In this document: in pieces, positions 1,158 through 62,030 of the stretch
Layout of the letters: each line of letters begins with the position of its first letter
How positions within the stretch are numbered: the first letter of the stretch is position 1
Origin: Thalia democratica
Taxonomy: Eukaryota
Assembly: GCA_965202585.1 (NCBI GenBank)
Contig: OZ241829.1
Span: 73,408,001-73,472,000, forward strand
Length of the DNA stretch: 64,000 nucleotides
Direction: 5' to 3'
Made by a program: the position numbers and the translations under genes
The notes under the pieces: generated by a model
Told to the model about the DNA's origin: nothing
Database searches by the model: none
What the model saw: only the letters and a program-made list of their open reading frames with translations

Positions 1158-1300
1158 TATTATGACGTCACAAGTAACACGAAAAACTCTTATGACGTCA
1201 TAATTTACTTTAGCTTCACAAGCCGAATCTCAAAGCGACTTCACCAACAGGATTTGAAGTCAGAGACATAACTATTAAACTATTCAAATTATTTTAAAAG
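1158..1300. promoter_or_regulatory. X module (degenerate)
   Basis: TGACGTCA at 1163 and 1193, followed by GCTTCAC...AAAGCGACTTCACC, homologous to the other X copies. Confidence 0.55.
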
Positions 1301-2080
1301 ATTGTAAAAATTATCAAAGTTTGCTCTTTGTGAAACAAACATAAATTATTCGAAATTTTTAAATGAGATACCTCTCGAAACAGACAACCTATCCAGTGGA
1401 GTTGTAGACTGGTCAACAAAAAGAGTATAAGCTCATAAGAAGTATACAAAACAGTCACCTTGAAATAAACGGAAACAATTGGCGGCTGAAAGACACCAGG
1501 TTTGATATCGAAGACAATTAAATCACAAAGAGTGGACGGGCAAGGGTATCATTGGCGACAACAAATACATTAGTAAATAAGATTTTCTTATTTGCCGATC
1601 ATATATATGAACGATTGTATTATTTCCTTGGAACGAAAAGACATAAAAATTTGTAAGCACTGTTTACATATTAAGATGGTGCTTACCTTTGGTTCTTGTT
1701 TGTTTTACTATTTGCCGCTGCGATTTAAACTACGAAGTAAGAAAGCAGGTGCACGACTTTTATTGATAAACACATGCAACATAAGTTTGTCTGTTTACAC
1801 TAAATGTAGGACCACCCGAAAGCGAAATATCTACTGATCATCCAACAAATTTTATCCAGCTACCTTTTACTGAAACTAGAATGTTTTTATAGTTGATTGA
1901 ATGGATTTATGATTCGGGTGAAGTATAATGAACGTGAAACAAATATTTGAGTACAGCACGTACAAATATTCTTTAGTTTACATCTTTTAACTAATACTTA
2001 GGATAAAACATGATTAGTAGAGTAGATTTCAATGTATTGTTTGATAAAAAAAAAACTAGAGGATTAATCTGACATATGAT

Positions 2081-2734
2081 ATGGGTATGAGTCAAATATG
2101 CACGAAGGGACACTTTTCCACAAAAGGTCACTTTTGAACGAAGACGCTTTTGCACGATAAGTCACTTTTGTACAAAAACATTTTAGCACGTGTTGAACTT
2201 TTTTTTTCCTTTTTTTTTTGATTTTAATTTTTAATGTATTTTATTTTTACTATCACTATTACCCTTAACCTTAACCTCAGTCGGTAAATTCTTTTTTTTA
2301 TTAATTAGTATTTAAAGTTAAATTTTTAGCTTATAAGTTTTTTATTTATTATTATTTTTATTTTTATTGTCATTATTTCACCTAGCCCTTACCCTCAGCC
2401 GGTTTTTTTTTACTTTTTTTTTATTACTTTTTTTTTCTTATTTTTTTTTAATAATAGATTTTATTAGCTATTCTTTTATTCTTTTGCTAGCACTGTTACC
2501 CCTAACCCTTACCCCTTGGTTAGTAACCTCTTTTTATTCTTTTTGTTATTTTATTAATTATGTTTCATGTATTTGTATTATTTTTTTTTTTGTTTTTTTT
2601 GACTCTCGAGCAAAAATTACCCTTTATGCAGAAGTGACCCTCCTTGCAAAAGTTTCTTGGTTCAAAAGTGTCCCTTCGTGCATATTTGATCATTTGTACA
2701 AAAGTGTATTCGTGAATATTCAAACCGTTCCCAT
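2081..2734. mobile_element. Non-autonomous element, ATGGG...CCCAT ends, CGTGCAAAA family
   Basis: Inverted ends with TCAAATATGCACGAAGGGACACTTTT on both sides; T-rich core with TAACCC-like motifs. Confidence 0.7.
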
Positions 2735-2782
2735 ATAGTATAGTAATACAATAATTTTAAATTATTAATGTATATAACTCAC

Positions 2783-2905
2783 AGGTGTTTTGGCTGTGTT
2801 TTCCTCGAGAAATTTCAACTCCTGGTGAGTTCATATTTCCGTGATGTTAGCTTGAAAGTTTGTAGCCTTTCATTCTTAAAACCCTGATATTTGAACTCCG
2901 TGCAA
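2783..2905 (-). other. Candidate non-coding exon (S1 family)
   Basis: Minus strand TTTTAACAG acceptor and GTGAGT donor; shares the TCAAGCT(A/G)ACATCA core with other S1 exons; stops in all three frames. Confidence 0.5.
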
Positions 2906-3320
2906 CTGTTAAAACATTAAAGTTTAGTTATTACTTTTATACGAAGTATAACTTGAAAAAGTAATAGTTGACTAACAAAATTCACAAATAAGGTACGATA
3001 TTAACTACTACTTACACTTTTACTTACTAAAATGTACACTTCCACTATTGTTTAATGATCACTACATGACGTCAATCTAATTTTTCGAGCTCCTTCCTTT
3101 GGCTCTTTAAAGTTTTAAATTTACTTAATAGGAAGTACAACTAACTTTAAAGATAACAACAGTCTATAATACTTTAAAGTGTTCAAGTATAGTCAATTTT
3201 TCCTTTATAATAATTTATTCTAGAAGTACTTTTCATAGTTTTACTTGGTTCACAATAGCAACCAAAAAAAAGCATTTTTTCAATCTAAGTTCTAACAATA
3301 GCTTAAAACAAAGTTTAGCC

Positions 3321-3566
3321 CAGGGTTTTCAAAAGCGGGCCATAACAGCAAAGAGGTCAAAATGGAGAGGGGGCATGGGTAGTAAAAGGAACAAAGGTGC
3401 CATGGGACCATAGTTTAAAACTAACACAAGATATTCTAAGTTTTTGGAAAAAGTAAAAAAAAGGTTTTAATTTAAAGATAGTTTTTTAAGAACTCTTGTC
3501 GGAGAAGCCTTAGCTTTTTTGTTTCTTTAAAGGAAAGCCTTATAAAAAAACATTTGGGAAATCCTC
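3321..3566. mobile_element. hAT MITE
   Basis: CAGGGTTTTC / GGGAAATCCTC ends; 8-bp TSD GTTTAGCC / GTTTAGCT. Confidence 0.75.
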
Positions 3567-3909
3567 GTTTAGCTGAACAACAAACATGTTTTTTATTAGT
3601 TTTGTTTTACTTAGTTTTTATTTTATTTTCAGTATATTCTTTTAAATCTCATCTAACCATTATACTTTGTTAAAAGTTGTGTTTGACACGCTGATGTTTA
3701 AACTTTTGTACTTTATTTTATAGTTATTTTCAAAAAAAAATAATTATGTGATGATCAGACTTAATTTTTTTTTTGGTATTTAAAATTAAAAAATTGAAAA
3801 TTTGGAAAATTTTTACATTAAACGCGTTTAAGTTTTTTACAATAAGCAAAATAACAACAAAATTCACAGCACTGTTTGCACAAAGGAAAATAAATGAACA
3901 GCGAAAAAC

Positions 3910-4029
3910 TATTATGACGTCACTACTAATCAAGTTTATTTGACGTCACGATTCACTTATGGCTTCACCAGCCAAAGCCTGACGCGAAATCACCGATTGG
4001 CTTCAAAGTCAAGATGAGTTAGTTTAGAG
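3910..4029. promoter_or_regulatory. X module interrupted by a hAT insertion
   Basis: TGACGTCA at 3915 and 3941, then GCTTCACCAGCC...GCGAAATCACCG; homology stops at CAGGGTTTCCC (4030). Confidence 0.65.
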
Positions 4030-4140
4030 CAGGGTTTCCCAAACTCATTTACTAAATCGCCCCCTTTTCAGTAATTTGAAAAAATATCGCCCCCCACGAT
4101 TGTACAAAGTAGTTTTTCTTTTTAGTACAAACTTTTGAGA
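4030..4140. mobile_element. hAT-type left end
   Basis: CAGGGTTTCCCAAACT after GTTTAGAG; no matching right end found. Confidence 0.5.
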
Positions 4141-5970: not shown

Positions 5971-6183
5971 TTCGCTGTTTAAGTATCTTCGAAGAGGGCG
6001 TTAATCAAAGTAGCTTGGGATTCCTTAAGAGATCACAGTTATACAAATGTTTTAATTTTAACTTTGGTTACAACATCATAAGTAGTAGTTTTTAATGAGC
6101 TTAATTAATCAAAGACAAAGATGTGCAACAAAAAGTTAGTTCTGGTTACTTACACTACATATATTATAAATATGAAAACTTAC

Positions 6184-6278: not shown

Positions 6279-7261
6279 CTGTTGAAAAAATAAATTGAAC
6301 ATTTATTCAAATCAAGATTTTAATCATACTATTAATGAGTTTTGCGTATTTTGCTTTATAAATAGTTTAGCATTGCTGTTTACACCTACAGTTAAAGTTA
6401 TGTTTATTTATTTTTATGACTTGACTACTGAAGCTACTTTTCAGATTTTTTTAAAAATAGACTAAAACTAAATAAAAATAAATATATAACTATCGGATTT
6501 TTTTACTCAATAATTATTCTTCTTTATTAATTAAAAAAATGAAGTGATAATAAAAGATCTACCACACGATCAGCTTATTAACAAACAAGTCTTATTATAA
6601 ACTATTAAATTTTTCGACTTAAGCTGTTTTAGAATTAACAACTTTGGAATCTTAATAACTTATCAAATTTTACTTCAAGCTAAAGTATTTTTAAGCTTTT
6701 AAAGCTTTAAGCTAAGTATATTTATAAAGTTTTTTTGTACAAAAAACGTTCAGTATCCAAAGTTCTTAATTTTTAAATCAAACTATTCGAAGAGTTAAAG
6801 GTCATCAATTTGCTATATAAAAACTAAGTATGGTTGTTTGATCTTAACTGAGTACACTAAAGTAATCAATTTGCTTTAATTTTTTTTTTGAAAAAAAAAC
6901 TATAACGGTTAATACAACTGTAGATAAACATGTTAAATAATATGAATTTAAAAAAAAAGGTTTTGATCAAGAGTTCAAAAGACATGTGGACCCAGAAAAG
7001 AACAAGTTTTTTATTTTAAGTTTATTTTATTTACTTAAAATAAATTGCCATTTTTTGGTTAGTATGCGTATCTAATGAAAATTTTACTGTATCTACGTCA
7101 AAATAACATATAAACTGTTAAAAATAAGATAGAAAAGCGTTTAGGAGTCGGAATTAACTTTTCTGCAGTCAACATTACGGTAGCTAAAATAAAAAAAAAT
7201 TGGCGTCTGAAAACGGTATAGGATAAAATCACACAACCGAAAACTGCCACAGGCAAAACCT

Positions 7262-7510
7262 GTTAGATGACCTCACAAGATGAGTTTAGCAGGTAAAGAT
7301 TCCAAGAATGAAAACATTTTAGTCGTGTTCGAGACGACTTTGAAATTGAGCGTAAATTTGTTAGAATCGGTCAATGCACTTACTGGTGCTGATAATTTGT
7401 ATCTATTTTAATTTTAAGCAAGAGTGCTTGTTAGTTTTTTAATATTACGTCATTAAAAATGAGAGATAAACTTGAGCAAACCGTAAAAACTTGAGAGAGC
7501 TGTTTTTTAC
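7262..7510. promoter_or_regulatory. X module (X2 subtype)
   Basis: TGACCTCACAA, palindrome AGTCGT-N7-ACGACT, right TTACGTCA and TTGAGAG...T-run. Confidence 0.55.
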
Positions 7511-8734: not shown

Positions 8735-10300
8735 AAACTTAACCCTCAAACTGGGAAGCTCGAAGGTCGTAGCATGAGTTGTGGTATGAATACTCAAAGT
8801 GTCAGTAATAAAAGAAAAACTTTTATTGTAAGGAACGAGTTTCTTCTTTTAAGGTTGACATTGCAACTTTTAAAGAACACTCGTTGCTGGTCTACGATAA
8901 ATAGAGAAAACTATTTTAACTTTCTATAGTAACATAAAAATGCAGATCACGGAATGGAAAACTGCGACCCGCGATAATATAAATGTGACCCAAAAAACTA
9001 ATCACAAATCAAATTTACGTTTTCTGTAAAAAAATAATAGCTTGAATTTATTTCAGTATGCTTTTTTATTGTTTACAATAATGAGCATAAGCAATCATTT
9101 GTTTTTTTTAAATTATGAGTTTGTTACAAATTTAACTGAGGTTTGATAAGGTTTCTACTTTAGCTGAAGTTCGACGTGACATCGAACCAACATGTGCCAA
9201 ATATTAAAGATACAGTCGGAGTTCGACATCTCAATTGTCATTGCTATTATTCTCTTAATGTTAGGTAAATTTAAAAGACTTGTATCGCGGTACGGAATGA
9301 CCACTTACAAAATAAAGAACTATTGTGACATCACAAAGTCCGCAGCGAAATTACCGTAAAGCTTTATAGTCAAAGATACAATCATATTAAGCAATTTCAA
9401 ATGGATTTAAGAATTCTTCATGTGTTGAAAAACAAACTCAAACAATGCATTTCAACAAGAATCATTGAACGCAATTTGTATTGTGAAGGCAAACGATAGC
9501 TGGCTTAAAGGAAAACATTGCAACTCTTATGGTACACACTTTGCTGGTTTACAGTAAGTAAGAGAATTTTTTTTCAATTTTTAATGGTGTGATAAGAATG
9601 TAGTTCACGGAATGGAAAACTGTGACCCGCGATAATATAAATGTGACCGAAAAAACTAATCAAAAATTAAATTGGTCTCTTTGTAAAAAATGACGGCTTG
9701 AATTTATTGCAATTCGCTTTTTTATTGTTTACAATAGTGAGCATAAGCGATCATTTATTTCGTTAGGTCATGAATTTGTTACAAACTCAACTGAGGTATA
9801 AAGAGATCGCTAATATAAATGAAGTTTGACGTGACATCGAACGAATACGTGCCAGTTCGACATCTCAATTGTCATTGCTATTTTTTCTCTTAATAAATAG
9901 TTAATTTAAAAGACTCGTAACGCGGTACGGAATGACCACTTAGAAAATATAGAGCTACTATGACGTCACCAGTAGTGCAAAAAAAACGTGACATCGCAAT
10001 TCATTTTCGCTTTACAAATCAAAGTCCGAAGCGAAATCACCGTAAAGCTTAATAGTCAACTATACAATCATATTAAGCCATTTCAAATGGCTGTAAAAAT
10101 TCTTCATTTGTTGAAAAACAAACTCAAGCATTGCACTTTAACAAGACTCATTGAACCCAATTTGTATTGTGAAGGCAAACGATTGCTGGCTTAAAGGTTA
10201 ACATTGCAACTCTTATGGAACACACTTTGTTGGTCTACGGTAAATTAGAAAAAGTTATTCTAACTTTCTACGGAGTTTCATAGGAGTTTTTCGGCTTTTT
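8735..10300. repeat. Three tandem X-containing subrepeats (~640 bp period)
   Basis: AACATTGCAACT...GCTGGT(C/T)TAC and CGGAATGGAAAACTG(C/T)GACCCGCGATAATATAAATGTGACC recur; copy B has two units. Confidence 0.8.
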
Positions 10301-10917: not shown

Positions 10918-11039
10918 CTTGCATCTGCAGCAGCAATTTCAGTCTGCGAGGGATCCATTTCATCGACCACCTCTGTAGCGCCTTCAAGTGGCTCGTCTGG
11001 TTTCTGGATGTCGCCGTTCATGTCAGTTGCAACTTTCAT
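10918..11039 (-). CDS. Possible small acidic protein exon MKVATDMNGDIQKPDEPLEGATEVVDEMDPSQTEIAAADA
   Basis: GC-rich; acceptor TTCTAACAG at 11057, donor GCAAG|GTTAGT; frame kept in the paralog at 40335-40462; no family recognised. Confidence 0.3.
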
Positions 11040-11504
11040 ACCACCCTTCAGATAGACTGTTAGAAATCATTTATTTTAAAGAACTTACTACAAATTTAAA
11101 ACAAAAATAATAATTTATTTTATATAGCCTTGGCTATAGGTTACGGTTTTGCTGTTCAGACAAATACAATAACTTTTAAATGCAATCAGTCCTCGTTATA
11201 AGTATCTTTACTCAAAATTGAAATTTAATTAACTTAAGTTGAAATTTAAATACTTTTTGATCAAATTACAGTTTTAGTTTTGTTCATTGCTTAATTAAAT
11301 AAAATTGTATACAAAAAATAGTAGGTAAAGTAGTATTGTGTTTTAAAATAAATTAATTTTTATCAGTATTATAATTCAATAATTTCAATAATAAAAACTA
11401 ATTAAATTAAAGGTTGCAGTTTAGTTTTGTTTACGAAATCGCATGACTTGAAATTTCACAAAACTTTTAACGTTCAACGGAAAGTCGGCTTAGAAAACAA
11501 AGAG

Positions 11505-13684: not shown

Positions 13685-13760
13685 AGATGACGCCATAAAC
13701 CATTTGTTACCTTCAAACAGGCTTGTGAGAAACTCATAAAACTGTTACAACCTGAACCAA
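13685..13760. promoter_or_regulatory. R module
   Basis: AGATGACGCCAT...CCTTCAAACAGGCTTGTGAGAAACTCATAAAACTGTTACAACCTGAAC; paralogs at 43105 and 44255. Confidence 0.55.
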
Positions 13761-18884: not shown

Positions 18885-19330
18885 GCTCAGCCGAACTCTA
18901 GAGCCTTAAAAATATATACAACAACGTCAGTTTCAATAAAGCGAGTAATTTGCAAATTACTGCTATAATATTCGTACAAGTTTGTTTCGTTTGGACTTTT
19001 TCTAACAAACATATTAACAAAGTAAAACCAACAGTTTATTGAACAAAAACGAAAATGCACAAAAAGTTTTGGTTTAACTACCTGCGTATACGAAAACCTC
19101 TCGGTCGTAGAGTCGTACACGACATTTAGTGTTTTGAACTGTTAAAAAGTATTTGTAGTCATGCTAGATGACTTTAAAAATTCATTAGTTAGAAGTACTT
19201 AGCAGCAAGGTTGAGATTATAATACAACTTGAAAATATTTTTTATTAAAAGCGCTATATTGTTGGATTTAGTTAGTGACGTCATAAAATATAACAACTGT
19301 TTTATGATGATGAATTTTTGACAGTTGCTT
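18885..19330. promoter_or_regulatory. X module (X4 subtype)
   Basis: AGTCAT-N5-ATGACT about 98 nt left of TGACGTCA (19276); right flank homologous to that of the 11.8 kb and 48.1 kb modules. Confidence 0.5.
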
Positions 19331-20869
19331 TTTTCATTTTTCATTTTTACGGTTTATAAATCTCAATACAATTTATAGTATTTTGAAACATTCTCTACAG
19401 ATCGGTTGTTATAAAAGTGTTCATAATGTGCAATTAAGTTACAAAATCTGCTTTTTAATATTCGAACATATATTGTACTTTTATAATGTTATGCAATTTA
19501 CTGTTTTAATTCTTCACAGTTAGCTCATTTGTTATAAAAAGGCAGTGAAAGATCTTAAATAGCTTAGTATCATAAATAACAATTTCAGATCCGACTCAGC
19601 GTTTTTAGCATAATTGACATACTTCGTATAATCTTTGCAGAACATAATTAAATAAGTTCAAACAAGTAGCCAAATATTGTGGCAGCTCTGCTTGTTAGTA
19701 AATGAAGCAACAAATATACCTGTATTATCAAATATCAAATTTAATAACAAATGTTGTAAGTAGCTCTCTCATTGTTTACAACAATAAGCAACAACAACAA
19801 TTTAGTTAGCAACAGCCAGTAATCTCGTCTGTAAAGAGACTTAAACACGTACCAACTTTCAAACGTAAAATTAACACTCGCGTAAATTTACACAAAGAGC
19901 GTATTAGCCTCCTACTACCCCTTTTTTACTAGAAATAAATCAATCGATTTATTTTTCTTCAGTTTTTAACTATAAGTAGGCGAATGATTAAAGCACCGGA
20001 TAAGTCATTGAAAGTAGCTATTTTCTTATTTAAAACAATGGATGCAATAAAAAATCCACATATAGATTTGTTACAAAGCTTTTAATCGCTGATTACACTA
20101 AGAGTTGATCGGGGAGTTGGAAATAAGATTTGGATATAGAATCACAAAGTGCCAAGTTACTTAGATGCAGTTTGCCTTTTTAACTGATCCATCTTTGTCA
20201 AAAGCAGATTTGTATTTATAAGTGGATAATTCTAATTTATAAAACAAAGTAGATCAACATAAACGTAAACAGGAGTTTGTTTATACCCACTTAACTCGAA
20301 ACAAACTAAAATATAGGATATCAGTCAAACTTTTCATGGGATTAAACAGAGTTTTGGAGCTGTAGATAAATCCATGTGACTCAAATGACTAAACACGGAG
20401 AAGAAGCGAGATAAGTAAAAAAGACATAAAGAAGCACTCGAAGTAGCACTCTCGAAGGAACAACCTACAAATACGGTTTAAAATAATAAAAAATCAAAAA
20501 TATTGCTTAACATCGTCATTTATACACCGATTGTCAACCGTTTAATGAGTATATAATTAAGTGGTAACAATCAAAAAACTCCCGTTACTTTGCAGTGAGT
20601 GAAGGTGTAAAGTATTGAGAATTGCCCGACCAACAGACTACAAGTGCATCAGAGTGAAAATTAAAAAACATGAATTTAAAGTTCATGAATAGAAAAAATT
20701 TGGGCATCAGAATGAAAAATAAATATGCATAAACAGAAAGTTCGTGATAACGAAGAATTTACAAGCCTGCTCATACAAACAATTAGCTCGAAAAAGCACC
20801 ACGTAACATACCAACGGGAGCACAAAGTCAACATACGGTTGTTGCACTAAGACTGTCAACACAAACACC

Positions 20870-20940
20870 TTAAATAAACTGACAAATGACGTCATTAGCT
20901 ATTATTACGTCACACCTTCAAACAGAAGTGTGAACACAGT
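20870..20940 (-). promoter_or_regulatory. R module heading the 1.4-kb conserved block
   Basis: TGACGTCA/TTACGTCA pair plus CCTTCAAACAG; on the minus strand it is followed by an Inr-like TCAGTT. Confidence 0.55.
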
Positions 20941-23599: not shown

Positions 23600-23975
23600 A
23601 AAAAGCCGCGCGTAAAAAAGATGGCGGCAACACTTGAACGCAGGAAGTTTGCGATTTTATAACTAAAAACTGCTGCTTCACAAAACTTCAGCTGAAATAA
23701 AAACCTATTTGTTACGTCACAAGCGGCTTTTACCTCAAGAACCGAAGCGTTTTAGTTTCACAGAAAGCATGTTGGGCCGCGCTCGGCAGGCCTTAAAATT
23801 AATTTCTTAGAAGAAGACAACTTGAGCTAAATATGCGTGCTGCCACTTTGAACCTTACTCATACTGTGAAGGCGTTCAATCGTTGGTGACGTCACTAAAA
23901 AGTCAATTTGATATATGACGCAAGTAAAAAATATGAGAGAGTTTTTTACGCTGCCTCGGTCTACCTGCTGTTAGG
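23600..23975. promoter_or_regulatory. X module (X3 subtype), CpG-rich, with YY1-like site
   Basis: AAGATGGCGGC at 23618, TTACGTCA, GGGCCGCGCTCGGC, TGACGTCA at 23887; core near-identical at 34705 and 53360. Confidence 0.7.
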
Positions 23976-24449: not shown

Positions 24450-24458
24450 CTGTAATAA

Positions 24459-24698: not shown

Positions 24699-25906
24699 TC
24701 TAACACTTATATCGTTTAAAAAACGATTATGTTTGATTTGACAAAAACATACCAAATGCTTATGTAATAAAAAAATGTTTAGTATTTCAAAACAAAAGAT
24801 AATCATTATTAAAATAATATTTTGTGTAAAAGTGTCACAAATTTAAGCTAAGGAATCAAAGTATATATATAAACAATATTTCAAACAATTTGACTTATAA
24901 ACTTTTAAAGCACATTAGGGACAACGATAAGGTATGCTTTTGAATCGAAACTTAAATTATAAAATTATTAGTTGTGTTACACCTAAATTCAGTCATATAA
25001 ACATCATGTTTATGTTCAAGTATTTTAAAATACTATCTTAATAATAATACTACAATAAATGTGTTTTTTCTGTAGCGTAATTTATTGATGTACCACCTAT
25101 TGTATGTAAACTAAGTAAATGAAAAAAGCGGTGTAAGTAAAAACTATTACTATAAATCTAAATCAATAATAAGCAAAAATATTTAATGGATGTAAAATAA
25201 ATTTTAATGAAATAACTTATGTACAATGACAATAAATTAACTAACCAGAGGGTTCATGCTAATGTTCCATTTTCATAGTTTCTGATTACAAAAGACGTAG
25301 TTGATTTTTTTTGTTGACCCGTCTCTTGACTGTTGAAGTAAAGTTTGTTGAATAATTGTTAATTTATATAAGCTTTTTTATTGACATTTTAGAACATATA
25401 GAACTACATTATGAATGTGGATCGTAAGCTGGTTGTTTGCTTCAACGGTTAAAAGTAGAAGTTAACAAACGAAATTATTTTTTCAGAGTTTTTATTAATA
25501 GTAGTAGTACTGTACAGATAACTTAAAATATTCCATTTTTAATAACAAAAACTTTGTTTTAAATTTTAAGAAAAAAAGTTTGGAATGTTTATTTATTGGT
25601 ATAAGTTAGCACAACGCAGAGTAAAGTTGCTAAATACTAAAACAAAATATCACATAAATTTTATTTCTGTATAATGATTTATGAATGTTTAGTTAAAAAT
25701 AATTACGTCATTAAGAGTCAAGTGTAAAAGTTTGTATAAAGGTTTAAATTAGAAATAAATAAATTAATTAATAAGGTAAAAAGTGATTGTAGTGTCACAC
25801 AATAAAACCTTTTAACGGACTTGCGAGTATTTTTGACATAACGACAGAAATTTCAATCAGAGTTGGGAGACCTAGTGACGTCATATCAGAACCTTTAAAC
25901 AGGAAA

Positions 25907-26298
25907 ACGGGTCAAATATGCACCAAGACAAAACTGCACCAGGTTACTAAATTGCACGAGGGCGCAAGATTTCATGGAAATACTTTTGCACGAAGACAAG
26001 CTTGCACGAGGGGACAAAATTGCACGAAGAAAATTTTGCAAAAGGGTCATTTTGCGAGAGAGTGAAAAAGAAAACACAAAAATAAAACTAAAAAATAAAC
26101 AAGTAAATAAAAAAAACAAGAAGAAAAGGTTATGGGTAACAGTGATAGTAAAAAAAATGAAATTAATAAAATAATTAAAAATAAAAATTCAACCCGTGCA
26201 ATTTTTTTTTTGTGCAAAAGTATCTTCGTGTATTTTTTTGCCCTAGTACAATTTTTTCCCTTCGTGCAGATACCATTTAAACCATTGACAGATACCAT
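25907..26298. mobile_element. CGTGCAAAA-family element between R modules
   Basis: GGGTCAAATATGCAC left end, TTGACAGATACCAT right end; paralog at 55705-56134. Confidence 0.65.
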
Positions 26299-26329
26299 TC
26301 AAACAGACTTGGGAGTAATTTTATTGTCA

Positions 26330-26440
26330 CATTAGAACCTTCAAACACGAGCTGTGAACAATTGTGACGTCACATAAGAACCTTCAAATAGATATGTGAA
26401 TGATTATGACGTCACATCAGAATTTTTAATCAGGCTTTAT
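26330..26440. promoter_or_regulatory. Tandem R modules
   Basis: AGAACCTTCAAA twice, with TGACGTCA at 26365 and 26407; another at 25876. Confidence 0.55.
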
Positions 26441-37008: not shown

Positions 37009-37974
37009 CTAGAATATTTATTATAAATTAAAAGTTTGTCTTCATTAATTATGAAAATTTCTAGTTTACTAGCAGTTTAAATTTTGAAATAAAGTTTTTT
37101 ACATGAGGTAATTGTTTCGATAGATAGAAAGTTTTCTTATATTTTTAATATACAGTAATTTAAGTTTATAGAAATTAATCTTTAAGATAACTTTAGTAAA
37201 CTTATAATGCTTTTTAAATGTTAAAAAAACACTAATTTAATCAACTAAGTTTCTTTTATAAACAATGTTTTAAAACCTCAGTTTAAATAGTTTACTTATA
37301 AACAATAAACACTACATAAACTTTATAGTCATATTAGTTATGCTGAATTTAAAGATTTAAATGAAACTAACTTTAAAATAAATTTTAAGGTTGTGGTTTT
37401 TGTTATGATTTTTCAATATTAAAAGCTTGTAAATAAAACTGTTTTATGTTTTTTTAGCTTATTTCAACAAGTTATAAGCATTGTAAAATTAAGTAGAGGT
37501 ACTTATTATATATTTTTTTAATTTAAAACAAAAATCGGAATAAAACTTTAATTTTTATTTCTTAACATAATGATTGACTTTAAACTTAAGCAACAAATAC
37601 TTGTCAAATTTATGTTGCAAAGTTTATAATATTTTTATATTTTTTCATAGCACATTATATGTTGAATTAGAAAAAGCTTTGTTTTTTACTACAATGTATT
37701 AAAACTTTTGTTTTATTTTTGTTGAAAAATTATAACCATTAATTCTCATAGGAATAAAAAGTTTTCAATCAAACAGGTTTATTATTTTAGTTAAGTAGTT
37801 GTCAACATAAGTTTTGTGATTTTATATATAACAAATCTTAAAAATTTTAATACAGAAAAATCATTGCAATTTACATCGAACGACCGTAATTTATTGTGTT
37901 ATTTCGACCACAAATCAACAAATTTCACAGAAGTTTTTAAAACTTCATAAAGACGGCACACAAGTTAAAATACT

Positions 37975-38235
37975 ATTATGACGTCACGCGTAACACGATA
38001 AAGTTTTTGTTACGTCACAATTCACTTTTGCCAACCAACCGTAGTTCGAAGCGGAATCACCGAAAAGTTTCGAAGTTAAAAATGAATTAGTTTTAAGTCA
38101 TGTGGAATGACTGTTAAAAGTGTTCAGCAACGAGGCTACAAATTGAATCAATGCAAGCCAACTTTAAAAGTTTAAATTTGCTCAATCGCTCTGAAGCAAC
38201 ATATGTGCTCTTAAAATAGAAATTTGCAGAATTTT
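37975..38235. promoter_or_regulatory. X module
   Basis: TGACGTCA (37979) / TTACGTCA (38010), GTTCGAAGCGGAATCACCG, AGTCAT-N5-ATGACT. Confidence 0.65.
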
Positions 38236-39707: not shown

Positions 39708-40050
39708 CTATTATGACGTCACCAGTAGTGCAAAAAAAAAAAAACGTGACATCACAATTCATTTTCGCTTTACAAATCAAAGTCCGAAGCGAAATCACCG
39801 TAAAGCTTTAAAGTTAAAGATACAATTATATTAAGCCATTTCAAATGTTTGTAAAAATTCTTCCTTTGTTGATAAACAAACTCAAACATTGCACTTTAAC
39901 AAGACTCATTGAACCCAATTTTTATTTTGAAGGCAAACGATTGCTGTCTTAAAGATTAACATTGTAACTATCATGGAACACACTTTGCTGGTCTACGGTA
40001 AATTAGAGAAAACTATTCTAATTTTCTACGGTGTCAATAGAATTTTTCGG
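39708..40050. promoter_or_regulatory. X module
   Basis: Paralog of 9955-10300; TGACGTCA at 39714. Confidence 0.6.
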
Positions 40051-40964: not shown

Positions 40965-41265
40965 ACTTCAATGACTACATAAAACAATAAAGTCTCGTCA
41001 CAACTCACTTTCGTTTCACTAGCTGGAGTTCGAGGCGAATTCACCGAAAGACTTAGAAATCAAAGATACATTCATTTTAAGCCATCTTGAATGGCTGTTA
41101 AAATAAGCAAATAACGAGGATAAACAAGAATACTCTTCGACTAGACACTCTAAACCCAATTTGTGCTGTGAAAGCGAGTATTTTCCGCACTCGGCCTATG
41201 ACGTAATACTTAAATACAGACTTGTTTGTGACGTAAAAATTTGAGAGCTGCTTTTTTCTATGTGT
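40965..41265. promoter_or_regulatory. X module
   Basis: Paralog of 11505-11810. Confidence 0.65.
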
Positions 41266-43104: not shown

Positions 43105-43200
43105 ATCTAACAGATGACGTCATAAACCATTTTTGACGTCACACACGAACCTTTAAACAGGCTTGTGAGAAACTCATAAAACTGTTACAACCTGAACCAA
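43105..43200. promoter_or_regulatory. R module
   Basis: TGACGTCA at 43115 and 43134, then GAACCTTTAAACAGG. Confidence 0.6.
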
Positions 43201-45797: not shown

Positions 45798-47879
45798 CTG
45801 TTGAACAAAAATTGAATATTTATTCGAATAAAGATTTTAATCATACTATTAATGAGTTTTGCGTATTTTGCTTTATAAATAGTTTAGCATTGCCGTTTAA
45901 ACCTACAGTTAAAGTTTTGTTTTTTTTTTTTATGACTTGATTACTGAAGCTACTTTTCGGAACTATTCAAAAAAAAACTAAAAACACATAATAGTATTGA
46001 ACAATCTTACTAAATAGTTAGTTTTCTTTATTTAAAAATATTGATAAAAAAATGAAGTGATAATAAAAGATTTACCACACGATCAGCTTATTAACAAACA
46101 ACTCTTATTATAAACTATTAAAATTTTTTGACTAAAGTTGTTTTATAATTAACAACTTTGGAATCTAAGCAACTTATCAAATTTTACTTCAAACTGAAGT
46201 ACTTTTGACGTTACAAAAAACGTTCAGTATAAACGTTCAGTAAAATATAATGAATTTTATTATCAAGTAATTTTAAATGTTTTTTTAATGCTTAATAATA
46301 CTTATTATATGAATATTTTTTTTTAATTTTTCTTAATCTTTTTTTTGTCTCATTTTGTAGTACAGTTTGACAAAATCAAAAGGCTTTATTATCTACATTT
46401 TTAATAAACCAAGCCTTAAAAAAACTAAGTTTCAAAAAAGTGGGTTGACAAGAACACAATGATAAGTAAGTAGCTCTGTGTAAAAAGTTTAAAGCCATTT
46501 TTTATTTTTAGCATCATTTATTTTATCTGCTTCTTAATAAAAAGTTACTATCTTAAATGCATATTTTATAATACTTTAATGATATGCTTAAACTTACTCA
46601 CTACATATATAAAATTATGAAAAGTTATTTTGATGTTTTATTTTAATCAGTCTTTAAATGCTTTACTCTATACTTGAGCTATGACAAAGAGTATAATAAA
46701 AACATAAGCCATTAAGCCTGAAACACGTTTAGATTAGCCTCAGTGATATCTATTATTACAAGTAATGTTTATTATTACATGTTATTGTAACAATTTTGTA
46801 TGCTGCTTCTGACATAGTATACATAAATATAGTTTTTTTTTTGTAACATTTATAAAGTATCATTGTTACAAAGTAGTAGTAAGATAAATAAAGAACTTTT
46901 TTCAAACCTTTATTTCGTTCTAAAAACAAATATCAACTGGTAAACTAATTTCATATTATTAGTTTAAGCTTGTAGTTTTAAAGATCGCATTCTTGTGTAC
47001 AGTTATTGATAGATATATGCGCTAGGATAATAATTTATACTAAATAATTTATTACTGCAGTTCTTGTTGTCATAGTTTAAGTTTTTATTCTTTTTAGTTT
47101 GTATAGTAATCTTTTAAAACAAAGTTTGTTTACTACAGCTCATATGAAAAAGACTAGCTTTTATTTTTTGTTTAAACATAACTTAAAAATTTACAGAAAA
47201 CTTTTAAGCTACTAACCGAAATGTTTACACGTCGACTATTTAATTATCACTATTTCATAATTCTCATACATTAACTACTTCATTCGAATGTTACAGGTTT
47301 TTTTTATATGAAATATAAGTACATTTAAATTGAAAACTAATGATAATCTAACTTGTTTTAAAGTGACAAACTATAAAAGTATTTATTTTATGTAAGTTCT
47401 AGAAGCATTTTTTATAGTTTTCTATAATAAAGAATAATGAATAACAAACAAAAACATAAGCAAAGCTTCTGCAATATAAATATTATTATTTAGTTAAAGC
47501 AAAGTTTACATGAACAACAACAAACATTTTAATTATTTTTCTTTTAGTTCATTTATATTAGATTTTCGTCATAATGTTTTAATGGCTAGTCACTTAAACA
47601 AATGTTAAGAACTTGCCTGTCTAGTTAATTTAAAAACATTTATCATATTAATTTGCTTGGAATAGACAAAATATTTTTTGTAGTAAAAATACTTAAAAGT
47701 AAAACAGTATCATAACAAAACAAAATTAAATTTATACTTGACATTTTAAGTTTAAAACTTATATCTTCGAGGAAAATGTTTATATTTAACAACTGCATTT
47801 GAGTTGTTTTGTTATAAGCGAATGGTCAAAAAACTTCACAGCACTCTCGGCACGATAGGAGAGAAGAGAGCAAATAACT

Positions 47880-48160
47880 GTTGTGACGTCACAGTTCAAA
47901 GTTGCTTCACAAGTCGATGTCCGAGGCGAAAGCACGGAAAGCTTACAAGTCAATGATGAATTGATTTTAAGTCATGTTAATAACGACTGTCAAATAGAAG
48001 GGCACTATGAAGTTGTAGCAGTATCTACTACTTTAACTTGACAACAACTGAACCTAATTTGTATTGTGATAGTCAGAAGTTGCTGCGTTCAAGTTGTGAC
48101 GTCACCAAAAGCTACTACTATCAATATGACATAACATTTTGAGAGTTTCTTTTTTAAGTT
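47880..48160. promoter_or_regulatory. X module with perfect GTGACGTCAC at both ends
   Basis: TGACGTCA at 47884 and 48097; stem TTGCTTC/GAGGCGA; central AGTCAT-N7-ACGACT; TTTTGAGAG-T run. Confidence 0.65.
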
Positions 48161-54476: not shown

Positions 54477-55704
54477 TTTAACACTTATATCGTTTAAAAA
54501 ACGATTATGTTCAATTTGACAAAAACATACCGAATGCTTATGTAATAATAAAAAATTGATTAGTATCTCAAAACAAAAGAAACTCAATATTAAAATAATA
54601 TTTTGTGTAAAAGTGTCACAATTTTAAACTAAGGAATCGAAGTATATATATAAACAATATTTCAAACAATTTGACTTAGAAACTTTTAAAGCACATAAGG
54701 GACAACGATAAGGTATGCTTTTGAACCGAAACTTAAATTACAAAATTATTAGTTGTGTTACACCTAAATTGAGCCATATAAATATCATGTTTATGTTCAA
54801 GTAATTTCAAATACTATCTTAATAATACTTAGTTACTACAAAAATAATACTACAATAAATGTGTTTTTTCTGAATCGAAATTTATTGATGTACCACCTAT
54901 TGTATGTAAACTAAGTATATAAAAAAAAGCGGTGTAAGTAGAAAATATTACTATAAATCTAAATCAATAGTAAGCAAAAATAACTTATGAGTGCAAAATA
55001 AATTTTAATGAAATAACTTATGTACAATGACAATAAATTAACTAACCAGATGGTTCATGCTAATGTTCCATTTTCATAGTTTCTGACCACAAAAGACGTA
55101 GTTGATTTTTTTTTGTTGACCCGTCAACTTGACTGTTGGAATAAAATTAGTTGATTAATTTTAAATTTATATAAGCTTTTTTATTGACATTTTAGAACTT
55201 ATAGAACTACATTATGATTGTGGATCGTAAGCTGGTTGTTTGCTCCAACGGTTAAAATTAGAAGTTAACAAACGAAATTATTTTTTCAGACTTTTTGTTA
55301 ATAGTAGTAGTACAGATAACTTAAAATAATCCATTTTTAATAACAAAAATTTTGTTTTAAATTTTAAACAGAAAAAAGTTTGGAATGTTTATTTATTGAT
55401 ATCAGCTAGCACAACGACAAAGTAAAGTTGCTTAATACCAAAACAAAATATCACATAAATTTTACATCTGTATAATAATTTATGAATGTTTAGTTAAAAA
55501 TAATTACGTCATAAAGAGTCAAGTGTAAAAGGTGGTATAAAATTTAAATTAGAATTAAATAAATTAATTAATTAAGGCAAAATTGATTGTAGTGTCACAT
55601 TTAAACGTTTAATCGGACTTGCGAGTATTTATGACATCACGACAGAACTTTAAATCAGAGTTGGGAGAATTAGTGACATCATGTCAGAACCTTTAAACAG
55701 GAAA

Positions 55705-59374: not shown

Positions 59375-59545
59375 AAAAAATTGCATGTTAACAGCATATA
59401 AAAGAAATTCGTGCAACAGAAAACTACATGTGACGTCATAATACATATTAAATGACGTCACAAGCTGACTTTAGGAGTCAAGGATTCCTAGACTTAAAGT
59501 TTTGAGAATATTATAGTCGTGTTAGAGACGAGTTTTGCAAATATA
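59375..59545. promoter_or_regulatory. X module (X2), truncated
   Basis: TGACGTCA at 59431 and 59453. Confidence 0.6.
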
Positions 59546-59781
59546 TACTGACAATATCTAATTTTTTTTGTTAAATTTCCTGACATTTCCTGACTTTTGT
59601 CATTTTTTTAAGTTTTTCCTGACTTTTCCTGATTTCCAGACTTTACCTGACCTTGTGCCCTGCTGTGGTAAATTGTCATAACTATTAGTTCTAAACTAAA
59701 CTAATTAACTAAAGACGAAATCATACAACAAAAAGTAATTTTTATAATTATCACAATTTGAATATAAGTATAAAAATATAC

Positions 59782-59886
59782 TTTAGTGTTCCATGGACTT
59801 AATTCCGAACTAAGATGTATTCTTGAGATAGATTGATGAAGTACTCGCTTCAGCGTGATGGATAGGTTGTTCTATACTCTGTCCAA
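59782..59886 (-). other. Candidate non-coding exon (S1 variant)
   Basis: TTTTAACAG acceptor; donor degenerated to GTATAT. Confidence 0.4.
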
Positions 59887-60104
59887 CTGTTAAAATATAA
59901 GTTTTACTTATTCTGTTTAATGTAGATTTGAGGTTTATATCTGTAGAATTTTGTCTGGTACAAAGAATAGTCTAGCATTTGAAGCTATAATCGTTTGTCA
60001 TTTTAGATTGTGATTATCACATTTAAAATCACTTTTTATTTTATCTTAAAAAATAGCTGGCTTAAAATATTCTAAAAAGTGATATATATATTTGTAAGCT
60101 CAGC

Positions 60105-60570
60105 TGAAGTCTGGAGACTAAAGTCAACCTTAAAAATATATATAACAACGTCAGTTACAATAAAGCAGTAATTAGCAAATAACTGTTATTATATTCGTAC
60201 AAGTTTATTTCGTTCGGACGTTTTCTGTCAAACATATTCACAAACTTAAAATAAAAGTTTATTGAACAAAAACGAAAATGCACAAAAAGTTTTAGTTTAA
60301 CTACCTGAGTGTACGAAAACCTTTCAGTCGTCGAGTCGTACACGACATAAAGTGTTTTGAACTGTTAACAAGTATTTATAGTCAAGCTAGATGACTTTAA
60401 AAATTCATCAGTTAGAAGTAATAAGAAGCAAGGTTAAAATGATATTACAACTTAGAAATATTTATTTATTAAAAGCACTATATTGTTGGAGTTAGTTAGT
60501 GACGTCATAATATACTACAACTGTTTTTATGATGAATAAGTTTGAGAGTTGCCTTTTTCTTTTCTTTTTT
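60105..60570. promoter_or_regulatory. X module (X4)
   Basis: AGTCAAGCTAGATGACT; TGACGTCA at 60500; TTTGAGAG-T run. Confidence 0.5.
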
Positions 60571-61969
60571 CACGGTTTTCAAATTTCAATACAATTTATA
60601 GTACTTTGAATCTTTCTTTACAGATTGGTTGTTACTATAGGTTGCAAATAAGTTACAATATCAATTAGTTTTTTTAAATGTTCAAACATAAATTGTACTT
60701 TTTACAGTGTTGTGCAGGTTGTTGTTTAAATCTTCACAGTTAGCTTGTTTTTGATAGCAAGGCATGTTTTAAATAGTATCCAATAAGGGTATGATTCAGC
60801 GCTTAAGTATAATTGACATACTTCGTTTAACCTTCAGAGAACATAAATAGATAAGGTCACGCAAGTAGACAAAATTTAGCAACTCTGCCTGTTAGGACCT
60901 TCACAAATGAATCAGCAGATTGTAAGTAGCTCTATCATTGTTTACAACAACGTATATAGTCAATCATTTAGTTAATCCAAAAATGCGGGTAGCGAATGTC
61001 GTCAATCAAGAGACGTGAACACCTAACTAACACGTAAAACTTTCAAATTTCCAATTAAAACTCGCAAGTTAACTCAAAATGTACATTATCCCCTTTTTCT
61101 ATTGAAATATTTCAATCTTTTTTTTAAACAATGAATACAATTATCCATATATTTATAGATTTGTTACAACGCTTTTAATCGATGATTAGGCCGAGGGTTA
61201 ACCGGGAGGTGGGGAAAGAAATGTGGACATAGAATCACTAAAAGTCAATTTTCGACTCGTGTTTTTAACTGATCCTTCTTTTTAAAAAGCAGATTTGTAT
61301 TTACTAATGGTTTATTTCATTTTGAAGAACTAATTTTATGAAGACAAAGGAAAACAAAGTGTTTATTTATATACACTTAATGTGAAACCTACAAATGTAT
61401 AGGATATAAATCCAATTTTTACGGTGTTCAGCAGAGTTTTGGATAAATAGATTCGTGTGGCGCAAATGACTTAACACGAGAAAAGAAGCGGGATGAGTGA
61501 AAATGACATAAAGCAGAACGTCGTAACTCTAAGGAGCAGGCTAGAAATCCGGTTGATCGTATTCAGAAACCAAAATTATTGCTATATAACTTTCATTCAA
61601 CACCGTTTGTCAACCGTGACACGTGTTTTATGAATACATCATTGTGTGGTAACAATCAAAAACTCTCTCCCGCTTCTTCGCAGTGAGTAAAGGTTAGGTG
61701 TAAAGTATTAAGAACTGCCCGACCAACAGACTACAACGGCATCAGAGTGAAAATAAATAAAAACATTAATTTAAATTTAGTGAATAGAAAGATTTTGGGC
61801 ATCAAAGTGAAAAATAAATATGCATAAACAGAAAGTTCGTAAATACGAAGAATTTCAACATGAAAATATAAACAAACCCTACAAACAAAGCACCACATAA
61901 TAAAAGAAGGGGGCACAAAGTCAACATAAGGTTGTTACATTAAGACTGTCAACACAGATACCTCAATAA

Positions 61970-62030
61970 AACTGACAGATGACGTCATTAGCCATTATGA
62001 CGTCACTCCTTCAAACAGAACTGTGAACAT
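61970..62030 (-). promoter_or_regulatory. R module
   Basis: TGACGTCA at 61980 and 61998, then CCTTCAAACAG. Confidence 0.6.

What the first reader, a model, noticed from the sequence alone, without database searches (positions are those of the whole stretch)
1163..62005. Extreme enrichment of paired TGACGTCA (35 perfect sites counted by eye)
Seen: 35 perfect sites plus many one-mismatch copies, usually in pairs 18-42 bp apart and often in the extended context CTATTATGACGTCAC. Under one is expected from base composition, and CpG decay should erode such sites. Recent duplication explains only part of the count, since many sites lie in deeply diverged paralogs. Known: TGACGTCA is the CREB/ATF bZIP site, its binding is CpG-methylation sensitive, and KDWK/SAND proteins (GMEB/PIF) bind flexibly spaced ACGT pairs. 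Inference: one factor co-regulates the whole array, for example in the germline or after injury.
Basis: partly seen in the sequence, partly recalled or inferred. Interest (0 to 1): 0.7.

Follow-up and report, generated by a model that had tools for sequence, protein, structure and literature searches.

The report
Palindrome pairs in repeated non-coding cassettes
The 35 exact copies of the DNA word TGACGTCA are real and kept by selection, but they sit in small repeated non-coding cassettes of a transcribed tandem array, not in front of a family of protein genes, and what reads them is still unproven.

Summary
Observation confirmed: 35 exact TGACGTCA against 0.43 expected. 23 of the 35 sit in clear pairs 18-42 bp apart.

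All sites belong to a few related non-coding modules:
- a ~300-bp dyad cassette, with two inverted arms that each carry an octamer pair, around a covarying 6-bp hairpin;
- solo arms of that cassette;
- a 42-bp unit that looks derived from the octamer-proximal part of an arm;
- one further pair type (E) and one singleton.

Tandem segmental duplication multiplied these modules. The octamer changes about 4.7 times more slowly than its own flanks. Each half-site independently prefers a purine at -1 (67 of 70). ACGT cores as such are not enriched. This fits a dimeric bZIP (CREB/ATF-type) reader of double-stranded DNA, not GMEB/PIF.

No protein-coding paralogs were found: no Pfam hits, and dN/dS is about 1. 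Neighbouring exons on the minus strand appear spliced together in a related Tara Oceans contig.

The transposon refuter is not met with the data I could reach. Almost all module copies lie on one strand and follow the duplication blocks, while an unrelated foldback repeat in the same window is dispersed.

No RNA reads could be laid, so function stays inferred. The scan already found the same cassettes 126-186 kb further along this chromosome.

The parts
1157..1339 (+). Solo left arm (A-left) with perfect octamer pair 1163/1193; the hairpin is decayed
   Evidence: nhmmer profile hit; alignments A1 and A4
3067..3074 (.). Singleton octamer that fits no module class
3909..4030 (+). Solo left arm with perfect pair 3915/3941
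7251..7275 (.). Decayed older paralog of the E pair (TGACCTCA); a second decayed copy lies at 16103-16131
9326..9504 (+). Partial dyad cassette (left arm plus start of right arm); octamer decayed to TGACATCA
9955..10190 (+). Partial dyad cassette with octamer 9961 and hairpin 10076-10092
10918..11055 (-). 138-nt exon with YAG acceptor and GT donor. Paralog at 40342-40478 and a degenerate copy at 10589-10705. Not part of the octamer modules, but it shows which strand is transcribed
   Evidence: alignment A7 with the spliced contig L061
11505..11810 (-). Full dyad cassette X. Left pair decayed, hairpin 11626-11642, right pair TGATGTAA/TGACGTAA. Lies about 450 nt upstream (minus sense) of exon 10918-11055
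13688..13729 (+). Remnant 42-bp unit (octamer slot TGACGCCA)
19157..19335 (-). F cassette: octamer 19276 lies 102 nt from hairpin 19157-19173. Paralogs at 30637-30813 and 60380-60559
20887..20933 (+). B pair (20887 perfect, 20905 TTACGTCA) plus a partial 42-bp unit. Paralogs at 32345, 50242/50260 and 61980/61998
23712..23947 (-). C cassette, a full dyad: left site 23712 (TTACGTCA), GC-rich hairpin 23774-23792, right proximal octamer 23887. Paralogs at 34792-35069 and 53458-53729
25790..25905 (+). 42-bp unit array, left part (octamer 25876)
26290..26440 (+). 42-bp unit array, right part (octamers 26365 and 26407). Paralog at 56165-56269
27290..27390 (-). Inverted 42-bp units (octamer 27342). 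Together with 26290-26440 they bracket about 850 bp that contain an exon-like stretch at 26460-26618. Paralog at 57148-57214
29657..29686 (.). E pair, 22 bp apart, followed about 60 nt away on the plus strand by a conserved small hairpin. Paralog at 59431-59460
37973..38142 (+). Solo left arm: 37979 perfect, 38010 TTACGTCA, hairpin 38096-38112
39708..39947 (+). Partial dyad cassette, paralog of 9955-10190 (octamer 39714)
40973..41258 (-). Full dyad cassette, paralog of 11505-11810. The right pair is TGACGTAA twice
43115..43169 (+). Octamer pair 19 bp apart plus one 42-bp unit. A remnant unit lies at 44263-44283
47871..48155 (-). Old full dyad cassette: octamers 47884 and 48097, hairpin 47970-47988 with a G-U pair on the minus strand. 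Lies about 590 nt upstream (minus sense) of exon-like 47219-47285
55594..55701 (+). 42-bp unit array with decayed octamers (TGACATCA twice); paralog of 25790-25905

Best explanation
The octamers are fixed, selected parts of a small set of related non-coding modules. They are not promoters of protein-coding paralogs.

The basic module is a dyad cassette of about 300 bp. Each of its two inverted arms carries two octamers about 30 bp apart. The arms flank a 6-bp hairpin that is kept by two-sided changes. The inner octamer lies 94-108 nt from the hairpin on one side and 53-79 nt on the other. Solo arms, and a 42-bp unit that by eye matches the octamer-proximal part of an arm, account for most other sites. 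Tandem segmental duplication multiplied all of them inside a locus that is transcribed and spliced on the minus strand.

My reading, which is inferred: the octamer is read as double-stranded DNA by a dimeric bZIP factor of the CREB/ATF class. The right-hand pair of each cassette acts as an upstream or promoter element for a short minus-strand RNA unit that contains the hairpin. That unit could be an snRNA-like mini-gene, as proposed for the neighbouring stretch, or an alternative first exon.

Shown: counts, module classes, geometry, slower evolution, flank rule, hairpin covariation, and splicing of neighbouring exons in a relative. Inferred: the protein reader, promoter activity, and the RNA product.
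For: - All 35 sites fall into the module classes found by profile search. Almost all copies are on one strand.
- The common order of elements and the fixed distances hold across the X, C and F subfamilies, even though the sequence between them hardly aligns.
- Octamer columns show 4 changes in 96 against 19.1 expected from their own flanks, P=3.6e-5. 9 of 12 families are fully conserved against 3.6 expected. The aligned paralog is perfect in 38 of 55 ordered pairs against 14 expected.
- The -1 base of the half-site is G 38, A 29, T 3, C 0. Among non-redundant sites 28 of 30 are purines, P=1e-6. The -1 and +1 bases are complementary in only 16 of 35 sites, so each half-site is constrained on its own, as for a protein dimer.
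- The enrichment is specific to the full octamer, not to ACGT.
- The commonest variant, TTACGTCA/TGACGTAA (12 copies), is a bZIP-type hybrid half-site, from my own knowledge.
- The hairpin is 91.7% paired, with 4 of 6 pairs changed on both sides; 0 of 500 shuffles reach this. Two independent wobble pairs exist only on the minus strand.
- Minus-strand exons next to the cassettes are joined exactly at their borders in the related contig L061.
- In a related Tara contig, a single octamer lies 46 nt upstream of a TATA box and about 95 nt upstream of a signal-peptide-like start codon. That is one case of a classical promoter arrangement.
Against: - There is no RNA, chromatin or binding data.
- No known RNA family matches even at E<=1.
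- The U-rich element before the hairpin lacks the G of a canonical Sm site, and it equally reads as a polypyrimidine tract plus AG acceptor.
- Solo left arms keep perfect octamers without any right arm. So the left pair is maintained on its own and its role is unexplained.
- Within module profiles the octamer is no better conserved than other boxes such as AACCTTCAAACAG or GAAGCGAAATCACCG.
- TATA-type words are depleted within 120 nt of the sites, 2 against about 19 expected.
- In a relative's copy of the 42-bp array the octamer slot is decayed while the other boxes are kept.
- Earlier scan notes, which I did not check, say the same word is enriched in coding exons genome-wide. A simple promoter reading does not explain that.
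Confidence: 0.4

Rival explanations
1. RNA-level signal. The cassette core is an exon of the minus-strand transcript, and the octamer pairs are intronic palindromes just outside it. UGACGUCA is self-complementary, so copies on the two sides of the exon, or in neighbouring cassettes, could pair in the pre-mRNA. That pairing could define the exon, loop it out or circularise it.
For: - On the minus strand the hairpin is preceded by a U-rich tract plus AG in 11 of 12 copies.
- The cassette bodies end in GTGAAT, GTAAAT, GTAAAA or GTAGTT, with an octamer 2-14 nt further on. The 42-bp unit reads GTGAGT-N5-octamer.
- Inverted 42-bp arrays bracket an exon-like, better conserved stretch at 26460-26783.
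- The locus is spliced on this strand in a relative.
- Scan notes report the word just inside introns beside exons elsewhere in this genome (not checked by me).
Against: - The exons that appear in the spliced contig (10918-11055 and its paralogs) have no flanking octamers.
- The donor GT is present in only 5 of 8 left arms.
- The -1 and +1 flanks are not complementary more often than chance (16 of 35), and outer flanks of pairs do not extend a duplex. So nothing beyond the 8-mer itself supports pairing.
- Cassette exons are not seen in the one spliced contig available.
Confidence: 0.2
2. A genome-wide, lineage-specific process with an unknown reader, or a biased repair or conversion process, creates and keeps the exact octamer wherever processed RNA units lie. 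This array would be just one more place where it acts.
For: - 25 notes of this scan report the word in exons and at exon borders in this genome.
- Here the word also occurs, decayed to TGATGTCA, inside the S1 exon-like family.
- The octamer appears in module classes that share little other sequence.
Against: - The genome-wide claims were not tested here.
- In this window the octamers have a strict module geometry and a purine flank rule, which point to a specific binding site and not to a mutational bias.
- Older copies decay normally.
Confidence: 0.12
3. One reading: the pairs are CREB/ATF or GMEB sites in the promoters of an array of paralogous genes that one factor switches on together, for example in the germline or after injury.
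For: - The octamer is the classical CRE, occurs in pairs, and is conserved.
- There is one CRE-TATA promoter example in a relative.
Against: - No coding paralogs: no Pfam hits, and dN/dS about 1.
- TATA-type words are depleted near the sites.
- ACGT cores are not enriched, which argues against GMEB.
- Octamer pairs lie on both sides of a small core and not upstream of long genes.
Confidence: 0.1
4. No function. One or a few ancestral modules that happened to contain the word were copied many times, and the apparent conservation is due to recent duplication or gene conversion between copies.
For: - Most sites lie in blocks 70-86% identical to each other.
- Other boxes of the modules are as conserved as the octamer.
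Against: - The octamer changes 4.7 times more slowly than its own flanks in the same alignments.
- 15 sites remain after masking all detectable duplicates.
- The flank rule and the fixed distances hold across subfamilies that barely align.
Confidence: 0.1
5. The pairs are subterminal repeats (transposase-binding sites) of a foldback or MITE-like DNA transposon family.
For: - The cassette has a dyad architecture.
- 42-bp unit arrays occur in direct and inverted orientation around an 850-bp segment.
- A scan note reports similar inverted arrays 186 kb away.
Against: - All 9 left-arm hits are on the plus strand, as are 12 of the 13 right-arm hits; the one exception is a weak match on the E pair. 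They follow the local duplication blocks.
- No terminal inverted repeats at the module ends, no target-site duplications and no transposase were found.
- Module patterns were not found in Tara contigs of relatives, except next to the homologous exon. A genuinely dispersed foldback repeat from the same window was found there.
- Pattern scans of metagenome and viral collections gave only chance hits.
- A central hairpin kept by compensatory change is not expected in a transposon.
Confidence: 0.08

Closest known systems
cAMP response element (CRE) bound by CREB/ATF bZIP dimers
   Same: The exact palindrome TGACGTCA, a symmetric half-site preference, tolerance of TTACGTCA-type variants, and occurrence in pairs. 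In one contig from a relative it sits at the classical distance upstream of a TATA box.
   Different: Here the sites lie in pairs on both sides of a small non-coding core, in hundreds of base pairs of fixed geometry, without TATA boxes and without identifiable protein genes. Binding is untested.
Tandem arrays of Sm-class snRNA genes (for example U1 and U2 arrays) with upstream promoter elements, an Sm site and a 3' stem-loop
   Same: Small repeated units, an upstream element at a fixed distance, a U-rich stretch followed by a covarying terminal hairpin, and tandem amplification. A neighbouring follow-up of this scan reports the same build in this animal's U1 genes (not verified here).
   Different: No Rfam family matches. 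The U-rich element lacks the canonical G. No PSE or 3' box could be recognised. The cassette is a dyad with a second octamer pair downstream.
C. elegans type-I piRNA (21U-RNA) mini-genes with the Ruby upstream motif
   Same: Very many tiny autonomous non-coding units in a chromosomal cluster, each marked by its own short upstream motif.
   Different: A different motif, a different phylum, and no evidence here for 21-30-nt products. This is a resemblance from memory only.
Inverted intronic repeats that pair across exons (circular RNA biogenesis; docking and selector pairing in Dscam exon clusters)
   Same: Self-complementary elements on both sides of exon-like units in a tandem array of similar units.
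   Different: Only an 8-10-nt palindrome could pair. No extended complementarity and no junction evidence were found.
Foldback or MITE-type DNA transposons with subterminal repeat arrays
   Same: Dyad symmetry and short repeated units in direct and inverted orientation.
   Different: Almost all copies lie in one orientation, are confined to local duplication blocks, and have no terminal repeats or target-site duplications. The internal hairpin is under structural selection.
GMEB/PIF (KDWK/SAND) sites: flexibly spaced ACGT pairs, as at the MVM parvovirus origin
   Same: Paired ACGT-containing sites with variable spacing.
   Different: The whole octamer plus its flanks is conserved, and ACGT cores in general are not enriched (190 against 204 expected).

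Membership tests
CRE / bZIP (CREB-ATF) binding site | Exact or near-exact palindrome TGACGTCA with symmetric half-sites | tested here: met
   35 exact sites. Purine at -1 of 67 of 70 half-sites, with each half constrained independently
CRE / bZIP (CREB-ATF) binding site | Occupied by a CREB/ATF dimer | not testable with these tools
   No binding or footprint data; no reads could be laid
CRE / bZIP (CREB-ATF) binding site | Lies within about 50-200 bp upstream of a transcription start | tested here: inconclusive
   Fixed distance of 94-108 nt to a covarying hairpin, but no start site data. TATA-type words are depleted
Sm-class snRNA gene | Match to a known snRNA covariance model | tested here: not met
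   No Rfam match at gathering score or at E<=1 (26101-26249 left out of the later searches)
Sm-class snRNA gene | Sm site RAU(3-6)GR followed by a 3' terminal stem-loop | tested here: inconclusive
   AAUUUUUA(C/A)AG precedes a covarying 6-bp hairpin in 12 copies, but the G is missing and the element also reads as a splice acceptor
Sm-class snRNA gene | PSE near -55 and a 3' box after the RNA end; same build as the species' own snRNA genes | not tested
   No snRNA gene of this animal was available to me. The claim comes from scan note s1-281708
MITE / foldback DNA transposon | Terminal inverted repeats at the element ends and target-site duplications | tested here: not met
   The module ends differ between the arms and no duplicated flank was seen
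MITE / foldback DNA transposon | Dispersed copies in both orientations, with presence or absence differences between paralogous blocks | tested here: not met
   All 9 left-arm hits and 12 of 13 right-arm hits are on the plus strand and follow the duplication blocks. A genome-wide test was not possible
GMEB/PIF ACGT-pair site | Only spaced ACGT cores are needed | tested here: not met
   ACGT 190 against 204 expected; 35 of 38 GACGTC lie inside the full octamer
Promoters of a protein-coding paralog array | Paralogous open reading frames under purifying selection downstream of the sites | tested here: not met
   No Pfam hits; dN/dS about 1 in all shared frames

The most novel reading that the evidence does not exclude
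This chromosome region, at least 64 kb here and by scan notes more than 250 kb, may be a dedicated factory of hundreds of tiny structured RNAs. Each would be driven or delimited by pairs of an exact 8-bp palindrome. The same palindrome would mark processed RNA units (exons and cassettes) across this animal's genome. That would be a lineage-specific signal whose reader, a bZIP protein on DNA or self-pairing in RNA, is not yet known.
Probability: 0.2. Interest if true: 0.8.

Novelty: new variant of a known kind. Interest (0 to 1): 0.5.

Why it matters
If the octamer pairs are promoter or processing signals of a large family of small non-coding cassettes, this would be a new class of repeated mini-genes in a chordate relative. 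It would also be a clean natural system for studying how an exact palindrome is read. The window links the unexplained genome-wide excess of this word, reported elsewhere in the scan, to a locus where its geometry is strict and testable: fixed distances to a covarying hairpin, and a known transcribed strand. If the sites turn out to be inert, the result is still useful, because it removes the idea of a co-regulated gene array and of CpG-decay-resistant sites.

Tried and rejected
- **Reads.** The one run search found only contig-level holders, none on record as RNA. Local scripts between still read the whole window file. One of them compared fetched contigs with it and reported matches overlapping those places.
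- **Known RNA families.** None matched, even at E<=1. No tRNAs were found.
- **Protein coding.** No Pfam hits in 10 open frames, and dN/dS is about 1.
- **Dispersal and transposon tests.**
  - A metagenome pattern scan gave 11 hits, all in GC 39-52% contigs with a single site each, so they are chance hits.
  - Two viral scans gave nothing or chance hits, with no module profile match.
  - A protein word search with a right-arm frame gave nothing.
- **Hairpin-extension idea for the pairs.** The flanks are not complementary beyond chance.
- **CRE-TATA promoter geometry.** TATA-type words are depleted near the sites.
- **SL-RNA reading of the cassette.** There is no conserved donor after a leader.
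- **Literature.** Nothing on this word in salps or tunicates, or in snRNA promoters of this group.
- **Spliced models.** Exons were searched singly by reference.

Full report
**1.

TGACGTCA occurs 35 times at exactly the stated places. Dinucleotide shuffles give 0.43 on average and never more than 3. Within one mismatch there are 75 sites against 13.5 expected.

Pairing is real:
- 18 sites form nine perfect-perfect pairs.
- 5 more have a one-mismatch partner. All of these pairs are 18-42 bp apart, start to start.
- 6 have only a two-mismatch partner, which 26% of random positions also have.
- 6 have none.

Among one-mismatch variants, the CpG-transition form TGACATCA is one of the two commonest, 11 of 40.

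ACGT cores in general are not enriched, 190 against 204 expected. 35 of the 38 GACGTC hexamers lie inside the full octamer.

**2. How much is duplication**

A self-comparison shows segmental paralogs of 65-98% identity, mostly 70-86%, that form a roughly 11.5-kb tandem unit and older blocks. After masking every later copy that blastn can detect, 30.8 kb remain with 15 octamers. That is 18 times an order-3 Markov expectation. GACGTCAC and TGACGTCA are the most over-represented non-trivial 8-mers.

So duplication multiplies the count but does not create the excess.

**3. What the sites sit in**

Profile searches built from the window itself place all 35 sites in a few module classes:
- A left arm of about 170 nt. 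It has 9 copies, all on the plus strand. Its two octamers lie 26-33 bp apart and are followed by conserved boxes and a small hairpin.
- A right arm of 110-160 nt. 12 of its 13 hits are on the plus strand. The exception is a weak match on the E pair. This class includes the families I first called C (23887, 35006, 53669) and F (19276, 30757, 60500).
- Left and right arm together form a dyad cassette of about 300 bp at 11505-11810, 40973-41258 and 47871-48155. The C family is also a full dyad with a diverged left arm.
- A 42-bp unit: octamer plus C, N5, AACCTTYAAACAG, N4, TGTGAG. It gives 22 hits in short arrays, on the plus strand except 27314-27382 and 57148-57214. By eye it matches the octamer-proximal 55 nt of the right arm: GAACC..TGTGAA..octamer.
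- The E pair at 29657/29679 and 59431/59453, with decayed older copies at 7251 and 16103.
- One singleton at 3067.

**4. Geometry and the hairpin**

Read on the minus strand, nine right-arm cassettes from three subfamilies barely align between their landmarks, yet they share the same order of elements:
- an A-rich stretch with CTCTCAAA;
- an outer octamer-like site;
- about 22 nt of spacer;
- the inner octamer, perfect in 7 of 9;
- GCnCTTTCACAG, then GGTTCAnAGTG;
- a U-rich stretch ending in AG;
- a 6-bp hairpin;
- AAAUG.

The inner right octamer lies 94-108 nt from the hairpin in all nine. The inner left site lies 78-79 nt away in left arms and 53-54 nt away in the C family.

In 12 copies the hairpin is 91.7% paired, with two-sided changes at 4 of 6 pairs (14 cells). 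No shuffle out of 500 reaches this, and slid controls give 29-36%. My first structure string was off by two columns. Two independent wobble pairs, U-G in the C family and G-U at 47970-47988, exist only on the minus strand. On the plus strand they would be A-C mismatches. That is modest support for a minus-strand RNA. Apart from this hairpin, no consensus structure is found.

**5. Are the octamers under selection, and as what**

In 12 families of young paralogs, the 96 octamer columns show 4 changes where their own +-150-nt flanks predict 19.1 (Poisson P=3.6e-5). 9 families are fully conserved against 3.6 expected from 8-column windows of the same alignments. In ordered pairs the paralog is perfect in 38 of 55 against 14 expected. 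Older copies do decay.

The base before each half-site is G 38, A 29, T 3, C 0 of 70. Among non-redundant sites it is a purine in 28 of 30 (P=1e-6). Yet the two flanks of one site are complementary in only 16 of 35. The constraint therefore acts on each half-site separately. That is what a protein dimer on double-stranded DNA produces, and it is not what a longer nucleic-acid duplex would.

The commonest variant, TTACGTCA/TGACGTAA (12 copies), is a hybrid bZIP half-site (my own knowledge). The whole octamer matters and not the ACGT core, so the GMEB/PIF idea is not favoured.

Against a special role for the octamer: inside the module profiles, other boxes are just as conserved.

**6. No gene array, but a transcribed locus**

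Ten open frames gave no Pfam family. Every frame that stays open in two paralogs has dN/dS close to 1. TATA-type words are depleted within 120 nt of the sites on both strands, 2 against about 19 expected. The 'paralogs' are therefore non-coding modules.

A GC-rich frame at 10839-11066 on the minus strand turned out to be a real exon family. Genomic copies in the window (10918-11055, 40342-40478, and a degenerate copy at 10589-10705) and in two Tara Oceans metagenome contigs (L059, L062) have a YAG acceptor and a GT donor. In a third contig (L061, JGI sample 3300018893), four such units and a 75-nt piece matching 47219-47285 are joined exactly at those borders (alignment A7).

L061 is thus derived from spliced RNA of a related organism, 82-92% identical to the window. 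It carries in-frame stops, so the transcript may be non-coding. This shows that the window's minus strand is the transcribed one for this family.

The three full X cassettes lie 450-600 nt upstream, in minus sense, of such exons. These exons themselves have no flanking octamers. The 3' end of L059 carries two 42-bp-like units about 190 nt downstream of the exon. In them the octamer slot has decayed (TGGTATCA, TGATGTTA) while the other boxes are kept. So the unit family is older than the split of these organisms and belongs to the locus, but the octamer is not kept everywhere.

**7. Transposon test**

For it: the dyad shape, and direct and inverted 42-bp arrays around an 850-bp segment.

Against it:
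- Almost all arm copies are on one strand and follow the duplication blocks.
- There are no terminal repeats, target-site duplications or transposase.
- The central hairpin is under structural selection.
- A genuinely dispersed repeat from the same window behaves differently. This is the foldback of TTGCACGAAG-type 16-18-bp repeats at 25929-26270, 55746-56117, 2234-2734 and 338-417. It splits the 42-bp array at 25790-26440, and it is found in unrelated Tara contigs L012-L014, which carry no octamer units.
- Pattern scans of the metagenome and viral collections gave only chance hits.

I could not search this genome as a whole. Scan notes place the same cassettes only in the neighbourhood, from 13.7 kb before to 186 kb after the window.

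**8. Mechanism**

My best reading, at confidence 0.4, has two parts. The octamers are bZIP-type protein sites. The right-hand pair of each cassette is an upstream element of a short minus-strand RNA unit that contains the hairpin.

A neighbouring follow-up (s1-281708) reached the 'snRNA-like mini-gene' reading and says this animal's U1 genes are built the same way. I could not check that, because no snRNA gene was within reach. What I could reproduce here is the strand, the geometry and the hairpin covariation.

The same landmarks also fit an exon. The U-rich stretch plus AG reads as an acceptor. The bodies end in GTGAAT, GTAAAT, GTAAAA or GTAGTT, with an octamer 2-14 nt inside the following intron. 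Two variants remain open: a promoter, then a short leader, then a first exon; or an internal exon flanked by self-complementary intronic palindromes. Solo left arms that keep perfect pairs without a right arm are not explained by any of these.

One anecdote supports a classical promoter role of the word in this lineage. In Tara contig L012, a lone octamer lies 46 nt upstream of GATATAAAAG and about 95 nt upstream of a signal-peptide-like start codon. It is followed by GAACCTTC at the same offset as in the 42-bp unit.

**9. Comparison, novelty, limits**

The word is the textbook CRE. The arrangement is not described in the papers I could search. That arrangement is octamer pairs on both sides of a roughly 190-bp core with a covarying hairpin, amplified in a spliced non-coding tandem locus.

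I file it as a new variant of a known kind of element. It is not a member of the snRNA, transposon or GMEB classes, each of which fails at least one tested feature.

Limits:
- The organism's identity (a salp, according to scan notes) was not verified here.

The scan had already found this same cassette array on neighbouring DNA.

Noticed in passing
window 25929-26270, 55746-56117, 2234-2734, 338-417, 5753-5801: A foldback element made of 16-18-bp TTGCACGAAG-type repeats. Its translations look like pentapeptide repeats. It is a dispersed repeat, also present in AT-rich Tara Oceans contigs L012-L014, and it splits the 42-bp unit array at 25790-26440.
   Followed up: partly
window 10918-11055(-), 10589-10705(-), 40342-40478(-), 47219-47285(-); L061 591-1196: A 138-nt exon family encoding an acidic 46-residue repeat. 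It appears as consecutive, exactly joined units in a spliced contig from a relative, where CAG/CAA codons are replaced by TAG/TAA in two units. The transcript may be non-coding or decaying.
   Followed up: partly
window 6172-6284 and paralogs near 15050, 28570, 45700, 58400, 63450: The 'S1 exon' family keeps a minus-strand acceptor and GTAAGT-type donor in six copies despite 66% identity and frame-breaking indels. On the plus strand the same letters read ACTTACTTGG, like a U1 5' end. Four copies contain TGATGTCA, a CpG-decayed octamer.
   Followed up: partly
window 26460-26783: A stretch 94-96% identical between paralogs (the surroundings are about 85%). On the minus strand it has a strong acceptor and a hydrophobic open frame, and it is bracketed by inverted 42-bp arrays. 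Its dN/dS is 0.5-1.
   Followed up: partly
window 21145-21400 and 51156-51876: Insertions present in only one of four paralogous blocks. The first carries 29-bp C-rich repeats. These are probably young mobile-element insertions.
   Followed up: no
window 24485-24687 and 54268-54461: 18-bp minisatellite (CACGGAGTGACACTTTAG, about 11 copies), 94-97% conserved between paralogs and lying downstream of the C cassette.
   Followed up: no
L012 8690-8890: In a Tara contig from a relative, a lone TGACGTCA is followed by GAACCTTC, then a TATA box 46 nt away, then a start codon with a signal-peptide-like first exon. This is a classical promoter layout.
   Followed up: partly
window 29735-29760 and paralogs 7330, 16190, 59510: A small hairpin GTCGT-N7-ACGAC about 60 nt to the right of the E pair is kept in all four copies, including the two whose octamers have decayed.
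   Followed up: no
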